Below are positions 886 through 23,498 of a stretch of 64,000 nucleotides of DNA, piece after piece. Location: sequence record PQ741806.1; one strand, written 5' to 3'. The translations under genes and the position numbers were made by a program. The notes below the pieces were generated by a model that saw only the letters and a list, made by a program, of their open reading frames with translations, did not search any database and had not been told where the DNA came from. Numbering within the stretch: position 1 is the first letter of the stretch; each line of letters begins with the position of its first letter.

Positions 886-2352
886 TTAAACAGCAACTTT
901 ACCAGCAATGTGTGGATGATATTCATAGTTCTCGATAACAAAATCATCTACACCAATTTCCCGAATATCTTTACCAATAGCTTCTTCTTTAAAACGGATG
1001 GTAGGTAGAACCTTCGGTTCACGAGTTAATTGAAGATCAGTTTGTTCTTGGTGGTTAGAGTAAATATGTACATCACCACCAGTCCAGATAAACTCTTCAG
1101 CAATCATATTCATTTGGTTAGCTAACATATGGGTCAGCAGACTGTAGAACGTGATATTAAAAGGTTTTCCTAAGAAAGTATCACAAGATCTTTGATAGAG
1201 TTGGCAACTCAATGCACGTTTAGGAACACCATGTTGATCCAGCCATTCTACTACTGCTTCATCTGTAGCCTTTTCATAACCACGACAGACACGCAGAAGT
1301 GCTTTAACCTGCTCAGCACTATCGAATGGAGGTTGACCACGAGTAATCTCACCACTAATCTTATCATGATAAGCATCAGCTTCGAACTGGGTTTGGTCTA
1401 GAGCTTGCACTCGTTCATCTACGGTCAGTTCACGGGTCCAGAACTGAATAAATGCGTGGCAAGGTGGGAGTGCCTGCTCATCAATAAGATGTGGCGCCCA
1501 TGCACAAACAATGATCCGACGAGAATCCGGGTTGGTGCGAAGTTGATCGATGATGTCTTGGATTTGGTCGATACGTCGAGTAACCACGCATCGATCGGTT
1601 TCCATGGTTGTACCTGGGATATCCGCCACGAAGTCAAAACCACGCTTCTCATAATCAAACCACTCATATTTAGGGATTACACGAGTGTCTTCAAGATTAC
1701 GCCATGTCTTACCGTAAACAGCACCTAGATCGCCGCCGACCAGACGCTCTGGTTCTTTATGCATCAAAGCACGATACAGTCGCTTGTTATATTCAGCACG
1801 AATACCTTCAGGATTTTTGGCTTCATCGAACCCTTCAGTAGCGAACCTATTCCACGACGTTACGCTAACTCCAATGATGTATTGGATTTCCTCACGGTTA
1901 ACTGGATATTCATCCCAGAAGGCCTGAATAGTCTCTGGAGTCATACCCGACTCGAATTCCGCTACAGTCTCAATGAATGGAGTAGAGTCATCGTTCATAC
2001 AATGTAAGTACATTACGAATGGGGCACCAATGAGGGCAGTTACTGCTTTAAGAACGGCCTCATCGGTCATCGGCTCATATACTGCGGTTTCAGGTTTAAC
2101 CCACTCGTTCCAGATGCGTACACCATTAGCGATCAGGTAATCCACCTTAGTATCACCTGACAGCATCCAGAACAATTCATGAATTACAGAAGCTAGATGA
2201 ATCTTCTTGGTGGTTACAACTGGTAGCCGATTATTACGCAGACTATAACGTTCTTGTTGACCAAACATGCTCTGAGTACCAGTACCAGTACGGTCACCTT
2301 TATGTACACCGTGTTCTTTAACTAAACGGATTGAATTAAGATATTGTTCCAT
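886..2352 (-). CDS. thyA: Thymidylate synthase with large insertions (488 aa)
   Basis: DRTGTGT, TTKK, IWNEW, ALPPCH catalytic Cys, YQRSCD, PFN, GDVHIYSNH motifs. Confidence 0.97.
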   Translation of the reverse strand: MEQYLNSIRLVKEHGVHKGDRTGTGTQSMFGQQERYSLRNNRLPVVTTKKIHLASVIHELFWMLSGDTKVDYLIANGVRIWNEWVKPETAVYEPMTDEAVLKAVTALIGAPFVMYLHCMNDDSTPFIETVAEFESGMTPETIQAFWDEYPVNREEIQYIIGVSVTSWNRFATEGFDEAKNPEGIRAEYNKRLYRALMHKEPERLVGGDLGAVYGKTWRNLEDTRVIPKYEWFDYEKRGFDFVADIPGTTMETDRCVVTRRIDQIQDIIDQLRTNPDSRRIIVCAWAPHLIDEQALPPCHAFIQFWTRELTVDERVQALDQTQFEADAYHDKISGEITRGQPPFDSAEQVKALLRVCRGYEKATDEAVVEWLDQHGVPKRALSCQLYQRSCDTFLGKPFNITFYSLLTHMLANQMNMIAEEFIWTGGDVHIYSNHQEQTDLQLTREPKVLPTIRFKEEAIGKDIREIGVDDFVIENYEYHPHIAGKVAV

Positions 2353-5591: not shown

Positions 5592-5613
5592 AGGAGAGCT
5601 AAATAGCTCTCCT
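5592..5613. terminator. Hairpin AGGAGAGCT-AAAT-AGCTCTCCT
   Basis: 9-bp stem after gene stop, upstream of early promoter. Confidence 0.8.
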
Positions 5614-20669: not shown

Positions 20670-21036
20670 CTACGTATACTCTTACAATGAACCAATTGAT
20701 TAGGCCAAAACCTTTTGGTGTGATGGTAATGTCATCTTTATATCCATTTTTAGTGATTACATTACGTAATACTTTAATTGCTTCAGGTGGAATAAGATTA
20801 GCATTACCGGTAACACTATACTCGAAATAATAACCTACACCTGGTAAATAACCTGATGCAATCTGGTTAGTACCTGTGATATTACTAACGTGTTGGAAGT
20901 CACTAAAAGCATTCTTGTAGAATAACAAAATATTAGGAATTACTTCATCCCTAATAGTAGAACTAGTAATGGCATCCGCCGATGGAAAATAAGGTACTAA
21001 TTCATCTGTTACATTGGTGCTATTAATATCGGACAT
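20641..21036 (-). CDS. Hypothetical protein (131 aa)
   Basis: GAGGA RBS, first gene after early promoter. Confidence 0.8.
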   Translation of the reverse strand: MSDINSTNVTDELVPYFPSADAITSSTIRDEVIPNILLFYKNAFSDFQHVSNITGTNQIASGYLPGVGYYFEYSVTGNANLIPPEAIKVLRNVITKNGYKDDITITPKGFGLINWFIVRVYVDEQIKKTTQ

Positions 21037-21082
21037 AATCTTTTCCTCATTATAAAAGGATAAATATCTTTATGGTAATCCT

Positions 21083-21105
21083 GTAATATAGATTTAAATT
21101 AATTT
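21083..21105 (-). promoter_or_regulatory. phiKZ-type early promoter
   Basis: Minus AATTTAAATC-TATATTAC (core 21083-21090). Confidence 0.8.
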
Positions 21106-21118
21106 ATAATGAATGGCA

Positions 21119-21145
21119 TAAAGGAGCCCCTGGTGGGCTCCTTTA
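21119..21145. terminator. Hairpin TAAAGGAGCCC-CTGGT-GGGCTCCTTTA
   Basis: 11-bp stem; no protein gene ends here. Confidence 0.8.
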
Positions 21146-21310
21146 ATGTAATAGGTCCGACCCCTATCTAGAGGTCGGTGAGTAGCAAGGCACCGTAGTT
21201 GGGGTTCGTGTCGTTCCTGACGATACTTTAGTACCCCGGTTTATTTACGACTGGATCACCCCCTTAAAGTGCAGTGCGTTTTACGCAAACTGCCTTGCTC
21301 TATATCATTG
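21146..21310 (-). ncRNA. Candidate structured ncRNA with 16S rRNA 3'-end-complementary segment
   Basis: ORF-free and GC-rich. 9-bp closing helix 21184-21192/21291-21299 with inner stems; hairpin 21157-21178; 21246-21266 complementary to 16S 3' tail; terminator downstream. Strand and ends inferred. Confidence 0.55.
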
Positions 21311-21386
21311 CACTGTGCGTATTTTTATTCGTTAGCTAATCTTATGACTTAGAGTTATATTTACATACCCCTTAAGGAAAAATGCA

Positions 21387-23498
21387 ATGATAGACTCATT
21401 TAGGAAGCTAATGGGCTCGCTATCAATTACTGAAACTGATCAAGAAATTATCATCAGTGGTTTTGATGGTGCTGCATTCATTAGAGATATTAACAAGTAT
21501 TGGCGAACCACTAAATTAGCTACGCAGTTATTTAACACGGTTAGTCGTCGTAGTATTTCATTTTATAAATTCTTTGCTCCTGAAATATATTACATGCTAG
21601 AAGCAGTAAAGAATTATAGAAGTAGATACATCTCTATTAAAACTGTTAATGCCATCCGTGAAGCAATGCTTCAATATACCTGGTTAAAAAATACTCGTCC
21701 TGTAGATACCAACTCTGTACCAGGTAGACTCAATTTCAAGATGTTAGACAAATTGACATTTACACCAGATGAGTCTCAAAAAGCTTATTTTGAAAATTAT
21801 AATTATCGAATTGACCAGTATGGTTTACGTGGTGATATTGTTGCAGGTAAACCTGGTACTGGTAAGACATTCATGACGATGGCTATTGCTGAAATGGTTG
21901 AGTCGGATATCATTATAGTTGTTTGTGAAAAGAAGTCTATTGATCTAATATGGAAGCCATCTATTATTGAGATGTATAAGGAAAGACAAAAAGTATGGTC
22001 GACCATTGATGATAAAGCCTACAACGGTCAAAGAATACTTATATCCCATTACCAGGCGCAAGATAAAATAATTGATCTATTAAGAAGCGGTATATTCAAA
22101 GGTAAGAACATTACGGTGATTCTGGATGAATCACACAATATGAACGATCCTAATTCTGCACAATCTCTTAAGTTCCAGCAAATATGTTTTATGTCTAACT
22201 CTAATAACAGATTATTAGCGTCAGGTACCCCTGTTAAAGCACTTGGTTCTGAATTAGTAAGTGCATTAAGAGTATTAGACGATCTCTTCACCAATGAGGT
22301 TGAAGAACGTTTTAAGAAAGCATTTGGAAAAGAGACACAGAAAGGATTAGATATTGTCCAACATCGCTTTGGGTTAATTGCGTACGTCATTGAAAAGAAA
22401 GATACTGAGGTTTTACCACCGAGGATAAAAGCGTATCGTATCAAGATACCAAATGGATCACAGTATACTCTTAATGCCATTAAACGTGATTGTGAAGCTT
22501 TTATTAGAGAACGTGTAAAGTTCTATGCTGCGCGCCGACCAGAAGATGAGAAGTATTGGGCTAAACTAATGGCGATACACGAGAACTCTCTTAAGACCCA
22601 GGCGCAGAAAGATGGTTTCGCTCGCTATAAGAATTTGATTAAAATAATTCAGAAGAATCAAGACCCGCGATACATTGGTGAAGAAATTAAAGAATCTAAC
22701 CAATATGAAAAAATGTTTATAGAGCCAACTTTACCTCGTAATGAAATAGCTGCTTTTAGAGATATTAAATCAGTTATAAAATACGTTATGCTAAAGATAC
22801 AAGGTGAATGTTTGGGAAGGGTTTTAGGTGCTAAACGCATTCAGTGCCATGTGGACATGGTACCGTATATTGACTGGGTTGGTATCACTGAATCAACTAT
22901 GAAGAAAACGATTGCATTTACATCGTTTGTTGAGGTTGTTGATACTGTTGATAAGTACACCAATAAATTAGGTATGCATCCGGCGGTGGTGTATGGTAAA
23001 ACCAATGACAATTTACCTCAAATAATCAGTAGATTTGAGAAAGACCCTAAATTAAATCCATTGGTAGCTACATATGCTTCCCTTTCAACAGCGGTCCGTA
23101 TGACGATGGCTGATACTATGGTGACAATTAATTCACCGTTTAGGCATTACATTCTAGAACAAGCTATTGCTCGAATTTACCGTAAAGGTCAGGATTCACA
23201 AACAGTCGTATATCAATGTACTCTCGATACAGAAGATGAACCGAATATCTCAACAAGGTCAGATGACATTCTAAAATGGAGTCAGGCAATGGTTGAAGCT
23301 ATTATGGGTATTAAATCTCCATTTGAGATCACAGAGTCATTAGAAAGTTATGTTGATAAAAATAATAATTTTGATGAAAATAAAATCATTTATCAGATGC
23401 TAAAAGAATCATTTGAGAAGTATGATATCGCAATTGATTTTAATGACTTTGATACACGTATGTATAAACCATATCAGCCCGCATATATGCGGTTTTAA
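21387..23498 (+). CDS. SF2 (SNF2/DEAD-like) helicase, 703 aa; virion-associated in phiKZ-like phages
   Basis: GKPGTGKT, ILDESH, SGTP, QAIARIYRKGQ motifs. Confidence 0.92.
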   Translation: MIDSFRKLMGSLSITETDQEIIISGFDGAAFIRDINKYWRTTKLATQLFNTVSRRSISFYKFFAPEIYYMLEAVKNYRSRYISIKTVNAIREAMLQYTWLKNTRPVDTNSVPGRLNFKMLDKLTFTPDESQKAYFENYNYRIDQYGLRGDIVAGKPGTGKTFMTMAIAEMVESDIIIVVCEKKSIDLIWKPSIIEMYKERQKVWSTIDDKAYNGQRILISHYQAQDKIIDLLRSGIFKGKNITVILDESHNMNDPNSAQSLKFQQICFMSNSNNRLLASGTPVKALGSELVSALRVLDDLFTNEVEERFKKAFGKETQKGLDIVQHRFGLIAYVIEKKDTEVLPPRIKAYRIKIPNGSQYTLNAIKRDCEAFIRERVKFYAARRPEDEKYWAKLMAIHENSLKTQAQKDGFARYKNLIKIIQKNQDPRYIGEEIKESNQYEKMFIEPTLPRNEIAAFRDIKSVIKYVMLKIQGECLGRVLGAKRIQCHVDMVPYIDWVGITESTMKKTIAFTSFVEVVDTVDKYTNKLGMHPAVVYGKTNDNLPQIISRFEKDPKLNPLVATYASLSTAVRMTMADTMVTINSPFRHYILEQAIARIYRKGQDSQTVVYQCTLDTEDEPNISTRSDDILKWSQAMVEAIMGIKSPFEITESLESYVDKNNNFDENKIIYQMLKESFEKYDIAIDFNDFDTRMYKPYQPAYMRF

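What the first reader, a model, noticed from the sequence alone, without database searches (positions are those of the whole stretch)
21146..21370. Multi-stem structured RNA with its own terminator between divergent operons
Seen: a GC-rich non-coding stretch in an AT-rich genome. It has closing helix AGCAAGGCA (21184-21192)/TGCCTTGCT (21291-21299), arm GGGGT (21201-05)/ACCCC (21233-37) enclosing GTGTCGT/ACGATAC, hairpin TGCGT-TTT-ACGCA (21275-87) and hairpin CCGACC..GGTCGG (21157-78). The 16S-matching segment lies in the unpaired part of the multiloop. GCAG (21271-74)/CTGC (21290-93) competes with the closing helix, hinting at two conformers. At 5592, 12333, 34968 and 60388 the hairpin just upstream of an early promoter ends a minus-strand gene. 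Here (21119-21145) no protein gene precedes it, implying an unannotated minus-strand transcript. TATG late-promoter-like motifs sit at 21367-21364 (minus) and 21343-21346 (plus). Wobble evidence for strand is mixed among the stems.
Basis: partly seen in the sequence, partly recalled or inferred. Interest (0 to 1): 0.7.

Follow-up and report, generated by a model that had tools for sequence, protein, structure and literature searches.

The report
Phage RNA complementary to 16S end
Between two phiKZ operons lies an unannotated, conserved small structured RNA gene whose only invariant stretch is complementary to the last 14-21 bases of the host's 16S ribosomal RNA, which suggests that the phage makes an RNA that docks on the ribosome's mRNA-recruiting tail.

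Summary
The window is Pseudomonas phage phiKZ (reverse orientation). The feature is a real, separate non-coding RNA gene on the window minus strand, about 148 nt (predicted start 21300, mapped 3' end 21153), followed by a strong back-up terminator hairpin (21144-21120).

Supporting evidence:
- A published ONT-cappable-seq 3' end (T095) falls exactly at 21153.
- A phiKZ middle-class promoter motif sits at fixed spacing in all 22 homologues.
- GNGA and UUCG loops occur only on this strand.
- The fold has a z-score of -3.3.
- Covariation is strong: 20 of 27 pairs carry compensatory changes, and no shuffle out of 500 matched this.

Homologues lie next to the SNF2 helicase gene in at least seven genera of Pseudomonas phiKZ-like jumbo phages. 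There is no Rfam match, and I found no description in the literature.

The only invariant segment, AGG(A/G)GGUGAUCCA, pairs contiguously (14-21 bp) with the 3' terminus of Pseudomonas 16S rRNA. Its single variable base changes A-U to G·U. My best explanation is an RNA that targets the anti-Shine-Dalgarno tail and binds 30S subunits. This function is inferred, not shown.

The parts
21319..21329 (-). Upstream promoter element AATAAAAATAC (A-tract plus TAC), phiKZ middle-class type
   Evidence: Read from the sequence. It matches the AAA(W)(W)TAC element found 18-21 nt (mode 19) upstream of mapped middle-promoter start sites in the supplement to Putzeys et al.. An A-rich element ending in TAC (GAC in one) sits 19 or 21 nt before the G of TATAG in all 20 class-I homologues.
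21300..21304 (-). TATAG initiator; predicted transcription start is the G at 21300
   Evidence: TATAG is present in all 22 homologues, 1-2 nt before helix P1. The spacing to TAC equals that of mapped middle promoters. The start site is predicted, not mapped.
21153..21300 (-). The RNA itself, about 148 nt (phiKZ NC_004629 plus strand 212854-213001)
   Evidence: The 3' end is ONT-cappable-seq terminator T095 at phiKZ 213001(+), which is window 21153. MFE is -52.1 kcal/mol, z = -3.28, 0 of 200 shuffles. Covariance model R1 scores it at 92.5 bits.
21291..21299 (-). P1 5' strand AGCAAGGCA
   Evidence: Pairs with 21184-21192. Six of the nine P1 pairs show compensatory changes, and 94% of cells are paired.
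21184..21192 (-). P1 3' strand UGCCUUGCU
   Evidence: As above. Together with the junction J3/1 it resembles the antisense of 16S ACAAGGUAGCCGUAG. This resemblance is significant only in some lineages.
21271..21290 (-). P2 hairpin (core UGCGU-AAA-ACGCA, 21275-21287; the outer GCAG/CUGC pairs compete with inner P1)
   Evidence: Three of six pairs are compensatory and 93% of cells are paired. The alternative register appears in the predicted complex with 16S.
21246..21266 (-). Segment complementary to 16S: UAAGGGGGUGAUCCAGUCGUA. The invariant block AGGGGGUGAUCCA is 21252-21264.
   Evidence: The block is invariant in 20 of 20 homologues apart from one A/G position. It forms 21 contiguous Watson-Crick or G·U pairs with the 3' terminus of Pseudomonas 16S; the range across the family is 14-21 bp. 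The 16S sequence was verified. The block occurs once in the window.
21201..21237 (-). P3 arm: P3a GGGGU/ACCCC (21233-37 / 21201-05), an asymmetric internal loop, P3b (21220-26 / 21208-14), and loop CAGGA (21215-19)
   Evidence: All five P3a pairs and six of seven P3b pairs show compensatory changes. The P3b loop is a GNGA tetraloop in 17 of 20 homologues.
21193..21200 (-). Junction J3/1, AACUACGG, conserved and single-stranded
   Evidence: Nearly invariant in alignments A3 and A5.
21157..21178 (-). P4 hairpin CCGACCUCU-AGAU-AGGGGUCGG; the mapped 3' end lies 4 nt after it
   Evidence: It forms 9 bp with a U·G pair on the minus strand, which would be a C·A mismatch on the plus strand.
21115..21145 (-). 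Strong intrinsic terminator hairpin followed by UUUAUG (back-up or primary terminator)
   Evidence: It matches the published phiKZ terminator motif of a stem followed by TTAT. The stem covaries, and the cUUCGg loops and the U-run are on this strand in every homologue.
21075..21098 (-). Neighbouring feature: early promoter TTTAAATCTATATTAC of the PHIKZ204-207 operon, directly after the terminator
   Evidence: It matches the mapped early promoters, for example P091 and P017. The same terminator-then-early-promoter order is seen in Phabio, Psa21, D6 and others.
21343..21346 (+). Neighbouring feature: late promoter P107 (TATG, start at 21346) of PHIKZ203/202
   Evidence: Putzeys et al. supplement: P107 start site at 212808(-), validated by Ceyssens 2014. 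It lies outside the RNA and on the other strand.

Best explanation
The region is a separate gene for a structured non-coding RNA of about 150 nt, on the window minus strand (the phiKZ Watson strand). The phage's own non-virion RNA polymerase transcribes it from a middle-class promoter. It ends at tandem hairpins.

The RNA folds into a three-way junction: closing helix P1, hairpin P2, and a long arm P3 capped by a GNGA loop. A 3' hairpin, P4, follows. The joining strand between P2 and P3 carries the one sequence that never changes in the family. That sequence is the Watson-Crick/wobble complement of the last 14-21 nucleotides of host 16S rRNA, which include the anti-Shine-Dalgarno tail.

Inferred mechanism: after export from the phage nucleus, the RNA uses this strand as an oversized Shine-Dalgarno mimic. 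It base-pairs with the free 3' tail of 16S rRNA in 30S subunits. This would occupy the site that recruits mRNAs, and so change which messages the ribosome initiates on. The structured body would give stability and possibly further contacts.

Shown: the gene, its strand, its 3' end, its structure, its conservation and the complementarity. Inferred: the 5' end, 30S binding, and any effect on translation.
For: Identity and strand:
- The window is phiKZ; the region is the PHIKZ203/204 intergenic space.
- The published 3' end T095 lies on this strand at 21153, and no transcription unit is assigned to it.
- The A-tract/TAC-N19-TATAG motif matches 20 mapped middle promoters and keeps its spacing in all homologues.
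- The terminator motif and its U-run, the cUUCGg loops and the GNGA loops occur only on this strand.
- G·U cells outnumber A·C cells 43 to 21.

Structure:
- z = -3.28.
- 84% of cells are paired against 71% in shuffles; 20 of 27 pairs are compensatory; 0 of 500 shuffles match this; controls with the pairing partners slid along the alignment give 28-44% paired.

Family:
- There are 20 class-I and 2 class-II homologues in Phikzvirus, Pawinskivirus, Miltoncavirus, Phabiovirus, Tepukevirus, Serwervirus and uncultivated jumbo-phage contigs. All are syntenic with the SNF2 helicase gene.

16S pairing:
- The Pseudomonas 16S 3' end was verified.
- Contiguous complementarity is 14-21 bp, starting at or 1 nt from the terminal base, in all 20 homologues.
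- The only variable base of the block faces U of CCUCC, giving A-U or G·U. The flanking U/C position faces G.
- The duplex with the 13-nt free tail is -21 kcal/mol, against -7 to -13 for ordinary Shine-Dalgarno sequences.
- No start codon or ORF follows the block.
Against: - No 5' end or transcription unit was reported for this RNA by ONT-cappable-seq, and it is not among that study's 17 phiKZ ncRNA candidates. Its abundance is therefore unknown, and a decoy would need to be abundant.
- The predicted unpaired probability of the block is only 0.3-0.6. In the phiKZ MFE fold its G-run pairs with the CCCC of P3a.
- Pairing beyond about 13 nt requires opening 16S helix 45, which is unlikely in mature 30S subunits.
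- The two phiKZ genes flanking the region have Shine-Dalgarno-like sequences themselves (read), so a general decoy would also hit phage mRNAs.
- No binding data exist.
- No homologue was found near the helicase gene of Xanthomonas, Ralstonia, Erwinia or E. coli relatives.
Confidence: 0.55

Rival explanations
1. Stabiliser model. The block is an untranslated Shine-Dalgarno-like 'ribosome landing pad', like STAB-SD of cryIIIA or the polypurine 5' stabiliser of Bacillus phage SP82. Its job would be only to protect this RNA from nucleases. The RNA's real function would then lie in its structured body, for example in binding a phage or host protein.
For: Such elements are known and also act by pairing with the 16S 3' end (reference list of PMC3997798). 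The block lies only about 35 nt from the predicted 5' end. The covarying P3 arm, with its GNGA loop and conserved internal loop, suggests a second interaction surface. A comparable untranslated 16-nt complement sits in the leader of tRNA clusters in Pakpunavirus and Nankokuvirus phages.
Against: Known stabilisers are 6-9 nt purine tracts. Here the invariance extends through UGAUCCA and the complementarity reaches 14-21 bp, far more than protection needs. The documented mechanism depends on 5'-exonuclease RNase J in Gram-positive bacteria. The RNA's 5' end is already buried in helix P1.
Confidence: 0.2
2. Antisense-to-rRNA model. The RNA is an antisense copy of the whole 3'-terminal ~45 nt of 16S, with the helix 45 loop replaced by P3. 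It would hybridise with both strands of helix 45 in precursor or unfolded 16S. That would block 30S maturation or mark the 3' end for cleavage by a double-strand-specific RNase.
For: A second, collinear segment, CUACGG(U)(G/A)CCUUG(U), matches antisense 16S ACAAGGUAGCCGUAG. Shuffle tests give 9/2000 for phiKZ, 3/2000 for U33 and 46/2000 for D6. Cofolding with the last 57 nt of 16S predicts both duplexes, opening of P1 and extension of P2 through GCAG/CUGC, with ddG -20.7 kcal/mol.
Against: The second match is not significant in 13 of 20 lineages. It coincides with the P1 3' strand, whose sequence is already constrained by P1. Helix 45 is stable and protein-bound in ribosomes. The whole model rests on thermodynamic prediction.
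Confidence: 0.12
3. Cis-regulatory leader model. The element is the 5' leader of the downstream operon (PHIKZ204-207), and the small RNA is a by-product of premature termination. This is the class Putzeys et al.'UTR-derived ncRNA candidates.
For: Two tandem terminators separate it from downstream genes on the same strand. That study reports many such short products in phiKZ.
Against: A separate early promoter lies between the terminator and gp204, and the same holds in Phabio, Psa21, D6 and others. The downstream gene differs between genomes: it is the helicase itself in PhiPA3 and unrelated small ORFs elsewhere. In these phages transcription takes place inside a ribosome-free phage nucleus (general knowledge, PMC13282480), so a ribosome-sensing attenuator is implausible. 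No alternative terminator/antiterminator pairing is conserved.
Confidence: 0.08
4. Plus-strand model. The functional strand is the window plus strand, which would give a mimic of the 16S 3' end (a helix-45-like stem plus an anti-Shine-Dalgarno tail) that soaks up Shine-Dalgarno sequences or rRNA-binding proteins.
For: The plus strand reads CAAGGCACCGUAG...CUGGAUCACCCCCUUA, which resembles 16S. One P3b position is G·U on the plus strand and A·C on the minus strand in phiKZ.
Against: No plus-strand start site lies upstream of the element; P107 starts downstream of it. The mapped 3' end, the promoter motif, the terminator U-runs and the GNGA and UUCG loops are all on the minus strand. The P3b position in question is a non-canonical pair in other lineages as well (A·G, A·A). 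The U/C variation in CCUCC would create an A·C mismatch with GGAGG, whereas on the minus strand it is neutral with respect to wobble pairing.
Confidence: 0.03

Closest known systems
Shine-Dalgarno / anti-Shine-Dalgarno pairing and untranslated SD-like stabilisers (STAB-SD of cryIIIA; polypurine 5' stabiliser of phage SP82)
   Same: A purine-rich stretch in an RNA that is not followed by a start codon and is complementary to the 16S 3' tail. One known example also comes from a phage (PMC3997798, refs 106 and 179).
   Different: Those elements are 6-9 nt cis-acting parts of mRNA leaders in Gram-positive bacteria. This one is an invariant 13-mer (14-21 bp in all) reaching the very last base of 16S. 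It is embedded in a separate, covarying three-way-junction RNA that has its own promoter and terminators.
phiKZ and 201phi2-1 small RNA candidates from ONT-cappable-seq and Grad-seq (e.g. the RNA upstream of gp182/gp277, 5'UTR_p40, 3'UTR_PHIKZ298)
   Same: Short, structured, terminator-delimited transcripts of the same phages. One of them is also conserved across jumbo-phage genera.
   Different: They lie at different loci. This RNA is not in the phiKZ lists; only its terminator, T095, is. None of the others is reported to be complementary to rRNA. I could not check whether one of the three intergenic sRNAs of 201phi2-1 is this RNA, because the supplement is not held.
Sponge or decoy RNAs (RsmY/RsmZ, CrcZ, 6S RNA)
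   Same: A structured non-coding RNA that would act by occupying the binding site of a central part of the gene-expression machinery.
   Different: Those RNAs mimic the ligands of proteins. The GGA motifs needed for RsmA binding are not conserved here: the block reads GGGGG in half of the family, and the P3b loop is GAGA, GUGA or GCGA in many members. The presumed target here is an RNA, the 16S tail.
rRNA-directed guide RNAs (snoRNAs of archaea and eukaryotes)
   Same: A small RNA with an invariant antisense element of 10-21 nt directed against rRNA.
   Different: There are no C/D or H/ACA boxes, no Rfam match, and no known partner enzyme. The host is bacterial.

Membership tests
Any Rfam 15 family | Score at or above the family's gathering threshold | tested here: not met
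   The whole window gave 0 matches at gathering thresholds. A permissive scan of 20950-21500 gave only chance-level hits (E 1.2-6.7, none on the RNA core).
Bacterial SSU rRNA fragment (captured 16S piece) | Recognisable by the SSU model, or collinear identity with 16S | tested here: inconclusive
   There is no SSU hit. Two collinear antisense matches exist: 19-21 nt at the tail, and 13-15 nt at 1497-1511 in some lineages. An origin from 16S is possible but unproven.
phiKZ middle-class transcription unit | AAA(W)(W)TAC element 18-21 nt upstream of the start site | tested here: met
   AATAAAAATAC plus 19 nt leads to the G of TATAG, compared with 20 mapped middle promoters. The spacing is conserved in homologues.
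phiKZ middle-class transcription unit | Experimentally mapped 5' triphosphate end | not testable with these tools
   No start site is listed on this strand between 207035 and 217730. The raw reads are not available.
phiKZ intrinsic terminator | GC-rich stem-loop followed by TTAT (published motif), with a mapped 3' end | tested here: met
   The hairpin at 21144-21120 is followed by UUUAUG, matching the motif. The mapped 3' end T095, however, lies after the upstream hairpin P4, at 21153.
Structured non-coding RNA (general) | Covariation that supports a common fold | tested here: met
   20 of 27 pairs are compensatory; the score is 0.411 against 0.19 in shuffles and 0.06-0.12 in slid-partner controls. 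Caveat: the alignment was fitted to the model.
STAB-SD / 5' stabiliser | SD-like sequence not used for initiation | tested here: met
   There is no start codon at a usable distance and no minus-strand ORF of 20 aa or more.
STAB-SD / 5' stabiliser | The element lengthens the half-life of the RNA that carries it | not testable with these tools
   This requires decay measurements.
RsmA/CsrA-sponge RNA | Several conserved GGA motifs in loops or single strands | tested here: not met
   GGA is absent from the block in the phiKZ, PA1C, PhiPA3 and 201phi2-1 groups (GGGGG) and from GAGA, GUGA and GCGA loops.
Riboswitch / attenuator leader | Conserved mutually exclusive terminator and antiterminator, and a fixed downstream gene | tested here: not met
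   The downstream genes differ between genomes, and a separate early promoter intervenes.
30S-binding RNA (proposed function) | Physical association with 30S through the 16S tail | not testable with these tools
   Only complementarity and predicted energies are available.

The most novel reading that the evidence does not exclude
Nucleus-forming Pseudomonas jumbo phages encode a dedicated small RNA that base-pairs with the 3' end of host 16S rRNA. This would be the first natural trans-acting RNA, from a virus or a cell, aimed at the anti-Shine-Dalgarno tail. It would blunt Shine-Dalgarno-dependent initiation. That would favour the phage's AU-rich, weakly structured mRNAs over GC-rich host mRNAs. 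Alternatively, the RNA could disable or mark ribosomes. The untranslated 16-nt complement in the tRNA-operon leaders of unrelated Pseudomonas phages (PAK_P3 and PAK_P2 types) hints that targeting this tail may be a wider phage strategy.
Probability: 0.4. Interest if true: 0.9.

Novelty: categorically new. Interest (0 to 1): 0.82.

Why it matters
How jumbo phages take over translation is an open question; so far only proteins such as phiKZ gp014 have been implicated. A conserved phage RNA whose only immutable part is an antisense of the anti-Shine-Dalgarno tail would add an RNA-based route. It would give a simple handle, in the form of block mutants and antisense oligomers, for testing how much Shine-Dalgarno pairing matters for the competition between host and phage mRNAs.

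It would also define a new RNA family with a three-way junction and a conserved GNGA-capped arm, suitable for structural study. Practically, it fills a gap in the annotation of the model phage phiKZ and of at least seven related genera used in phage-therapy research.

Tried and rejected
- **Rfam.** Gathering-threshold and permissive scans found nothing. The tRNA/tmRNA scan found none.
- **Generic promoter and terminator scan.** The sigma-70/terminator scan was uninformative, because phiKZ uses its own polymerases and its terminators have short U-runs.
- **RNAalifold on a plain MAFFT alignment.** It recovered only fragments of the fold. The structure had to be set by hand and refined with a covariance model. 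The structure-aware mode of MAFFT was not installed.
- **Homologue searches that added little.** The gp203 protein query against viral contigs found only phiKZ itself. A strict three-anchor DNA pattern found only three loci.
- **Search for enteric-type complements.** A scan for CCAACC-type blocks in jumbo phages found none. The model also found nothing within 4 kb of the helicase gene in four non-Pseudomonas relatives.
- **Supplements.** Those of Wicke 2021, the 201phi2-1 paper and the journal version of Putzeys 2024 are not held. Ceyssens 2014 is not held.
- **Readings rejected.**
  - A small ORF behind the block: there is no start codon.
  - An RsmA sponge: GGA is not conserved.
  - The minus-strand TATG at 21367-64 as the promoter: it is not conserved in relatives.
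  - A conserved intramolecular partner for the block: none was found.

Full report
**Where we are.** The window is Pseudomonas phage phiKZ in reverse orientation: it is 100% identical to NC_004629, and window position x corresponds to phiKZ position 234154 - x. The finding lies in the 350-bp space between PHIKZ204 (minus strand, start at 21036) and the SNF2/DEAD helicase PHIKZ203 (plus strand, start at 21387). No record annotates anything in that space.

**Observation.**
- The interval as given folds only slightly better than shuffles: z = -1.97 on the plus strand and -2.50 on the minus strand.
- There is no tRNA, no Rfam family at curated or permissive thresholds, and no minus-strand ORF of 20 aa or more.

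**Strand and ends.**
- The supplement of Putzeys et al. (bioRxiv 10.1101/2023.10.13.562163) lists an ONT-cappable-seq 3' end, T095, at phiKZ 213001(+). The printed 100-nt context is this very sequence and places the end at window 21153 on the minus strand. That is 4 nt after the CCGACC...GGUCGG hairpin and 8 nt before the strong hairpin at 21144-21120.
- T095 belongs to no transcription unit. No start site is listed on that strand between 207035 and 217730.
- The plus-strand TATG at 21343-46 is the published late promoter P107 of gp203. It starts downstream of the element, so the element is not part of the helicase mRNA.
- On the minus strand the sequence AATAAAAATAC-N19-(TATA)G matches the twenty mapped middle promoters in that supplement, which have AAA(W)(W)TAC 18-21 nt (most often 19) before the start. 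This predicts a start at the G of TATAG, window 21300, one base before helix P1.
- From 21300 to 21153 the RNA is 148 nt. Its MFE is -52.1 kcal/mol, z = -3.28, and none of 200 shuffles folds as well.
- Directly after the terminator comes a textbook phiKZ early promoter (TTTAAATCTATATTAC) for gp204. The RNA is therefore its own unit and not the leader of that operon.

**Relatives.** blastn, a DNA pattern scan and a covariance model recovered the same module in the following:
- SL2
- PA1C, PS119XW and HPP-Temi
- PhiPA3
- Phabio
- Psa21, D6 and RVTF4
- 201phi2-1 and Viktualia
- nine uncultivated jumbo-phage contigs of about 300 kb

Two further contigs carry a variant with a larger inner domain (class II). 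One of them sits 800 nt upstream of a helicase that is 44% identical to gp203. In every genome the gene lies beside or within 1.5 kb of the SNF2 helicase gene, although its orientation relative to that gene differs. All copies keep three features in the same order: the A-tract/TAC-N19(21)-TATAG promoter motif, the fold, and a terminator whose U-run (UUUAUG) is on the same strand as the RNA.

The hairpin loops also settle the strand, because they are special only on this one:
- cUUCGg caps the terminator in nine lineages.
- GNGA caps arm P3b in 17 of 20; phiKZ and SL2 have CAGGA and Phabio has GGGAA.

**Structure.** The common fold has these parts:
- P1, which joins the 5' end to a 3' segment.
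- P2, a hairpin stacked on P1.
- A long single strand.
- P3, made of a 5-7 bp helix P3a, an asymmetric purine-rich internal loop, and hairpin P3b.
- The conserved junction AACUACGG.
- Outside P1, hairpin P4 and the terminator.

I built covariance model R1 from 20 sequences, with a structure set by hand, and used it to re-align them. On that alignment:
- 84% of cells form standard pairs, against 71% in shuffles.
- 20 of 27 pairs show changes on both sides.
- No shuffle out of 500 reaches the observed values.
- Sliding the pairing partners by 1-3 columns drops pairing to 28-44% and the covariation score from 0.41 to 0.06-0.12.

For example, P3a reads GGGGU/ACCCC, GAUAC/GUAUC, GGUAC/GUACC, AUGAGC/GCUCAU or GUACUC/GAGUAC in different lineages. 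G·U cells outnumber A·C cells 43 to 21. The alignment was fitted to the model, which inflates pairing somewhat; the slid-partner controls share that bias.

**The invariant strand.** Against this background of covarying helices, one segment does not change in any of the 20 sequences: AGG(A/G)GGUGAUCCA. It occurs once in the window, at 21264-21252 on the minus strand.

I confirmed the 3' end of Pseudomonas 16S rRNA from genomes and with the Rfam SSU model...ACAAGGUAGCCGUAGGGGAACCUGCGGCUGGAUCACCUCCUUA-3'. The findings are as follows:
- The RNA pairs with this terminus without interruption for 14-21 bp, beginning at the last or second-to-last base of 16S, in every homologue. phiKZ pairs over 21 bp: UAAGGGGGUGAUCCAGUCGUA.
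- The one variable base of the block faces the U of CCUCC, so it alternates between A-U and G·U.
- The next variable base (U/C in CCAG(U/C)CG) faces a G.
- Both changes are neutral for this pairing. On the opposite strand, acting as a mimic, they would create A·C mismatches.
- The duplex with the 13-nt free tail alone is predicted at -21 kcal/mol, against -7 to -13 for ordinary Shine-Dalgarno sequences.
- No start codon follows at a usable distance, so the block is not a ribosome-binding site for a peptide.

**A second, weaker resemblance.** The junction plus the P1 3' strand, CUACGG(U)(G/A)CCUUG(U), is collinear with the antisense of 16S ACAAGGUAGCCGUAG. The RNA therefore looks like an antisense copy of the last ~45 nt of 16S in which the helix 45 loop is replaced by P3.
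- Shuffle tests support this in some lineages (phiKZ 9/2000, U33 3/2000, D6 46/2000) but not in most.
- The segment is in any case constrained by P1.
- Cofolding with a 57-nt 16S fragment predicts both duplexes.

I treat this resemblance as suggestive only.

**Interpretation.**
- Well supported (about 0.9): this is a conserved, unannotated non-coding RNA gene of phiKZ-like Pseudomonas phages, on the window minus strand, made from a middle-class promoter.
- Most likely function (about 0.55, inferred): it pairs with the anti-Shine-Dalgarno tail of 16S rRNA in 30S subunits. I can find no other cellular or phage partner, and no conserved intramolecular partner, for a 13-nt invariant stretch with exactly this sequence and exactly these wobble-neutral substitutions.
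- Open question: what the pairing achieves. It could be competition with host mRNAs, whose GC-rich leaders may depend more on Shine-Dalgarno pairing than the phage's AU-rich ones. It could be self-protection of the STAB-SD type. Or it could interfere with the 16S 3' end.

**Caveats.**
- No 5' end or abundance data exist.
- The RNA is not among the published phiKZ ncRNA candidates.
- The block is only partly accessible in silico.
- The two genes flanking the region carry Shine-Dalgarno-like sequences themselves.

**Distribution and literature.**
- Model R1 finds nothing within 4 kb of the helicase gene in Xanthomonas RTH11, Ralstonia RP12, an Erwinia phage or E. coli Goslar.
- No jumbo-phage contig carries the enteric-type complement.
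- Full-text searches found no description of this RNA, nor of any phage RNA aimed at the 16S tail.
- The closest known things are untranslated Shine-Dalgarno-like stabilisers and the other phiKZ and 201phi2-1 sRNA candidates.

Noticed in passing
L180 1172-1182 (PAK_P3 NC_022970 85971-85981); L014 2619-2631 (Pakpunavirus-like UViG; also PAK_P2, phiMK and others): Unrelated ~90-kb Pseudomonas phages carry GAGGAGGUGAUCCAGC, a 16-nt complement of the 16S 3' tail. It lies about 50 nt downstream of an annotated promoter, in the untranslated leader of their tRNA cluster. It is followed by AUCUCC, which can fold back on it, and by a GC hairpin. It is not one of the annotated PAK_P3 sRNAs. It may be an independent case of the same trick.
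   Followed up: partly
L025:2763-2936 (+) and L044:1772-1948 (+): These are class-II versions of the RNA. They have the same TATAG start, the same block, a P1 helix and a cUUCGg terminator, but a much larger inner domain with extra helices (CCGUAG/CUACGG, GAGGAUA/UAUCCUC, CACC-GAGA-GGUG). In L025 the promoter-like motif TTAAGTATTTGTTTGTGTA recurs just after the terminator.
   Followed up: partly
window 21153 versus 21144-21120: The published 3' end T095 falls after the weaker hairpin P4, 8 nt before the strong canonical terminator hairpin. This means either termination at P4 or cleavage in the AU-rich spacer AUUACAUUAAA followed by trimming. It was not resolved.
   Followed up: no
L002 1700-2743 and 2683 onward (PA1C); L012 1525-4434 (SL2); L003 (PhiPA3 gp233, 1056 aa): The neighbouring SNF2 helicase gene is split into two overlapping ORFs in PA1C. 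In SL2 and PhiPA3 it is about 270-350 codons longer than in phiKZ, and tblastn aligns it in two pieces. This suggests an insertion (an intein, an intron or an extra domain) in some lineages.
   Followed up: no
PA1C, HPP-Temi and PhiPA3 RNAs (L002 ~1548-1570, L003 ~1480-1500, minus strand): In this group only, the strand after the block (CUUUAAC) can pair with the P3 internal loop (GUUAAAG). The resulting 6-7 bp hairpin competes with P3a. It could be a lineage-specific alternative conformer.
   Followed up: no
window 21075-21098 (minus strand): A perfect early-promoter motif for PHIKZ204 is present, but the ONT-cappable-seq promoter table lists no start site there. That table has none on this strand between 207035 and 217730.
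   Followed up: no
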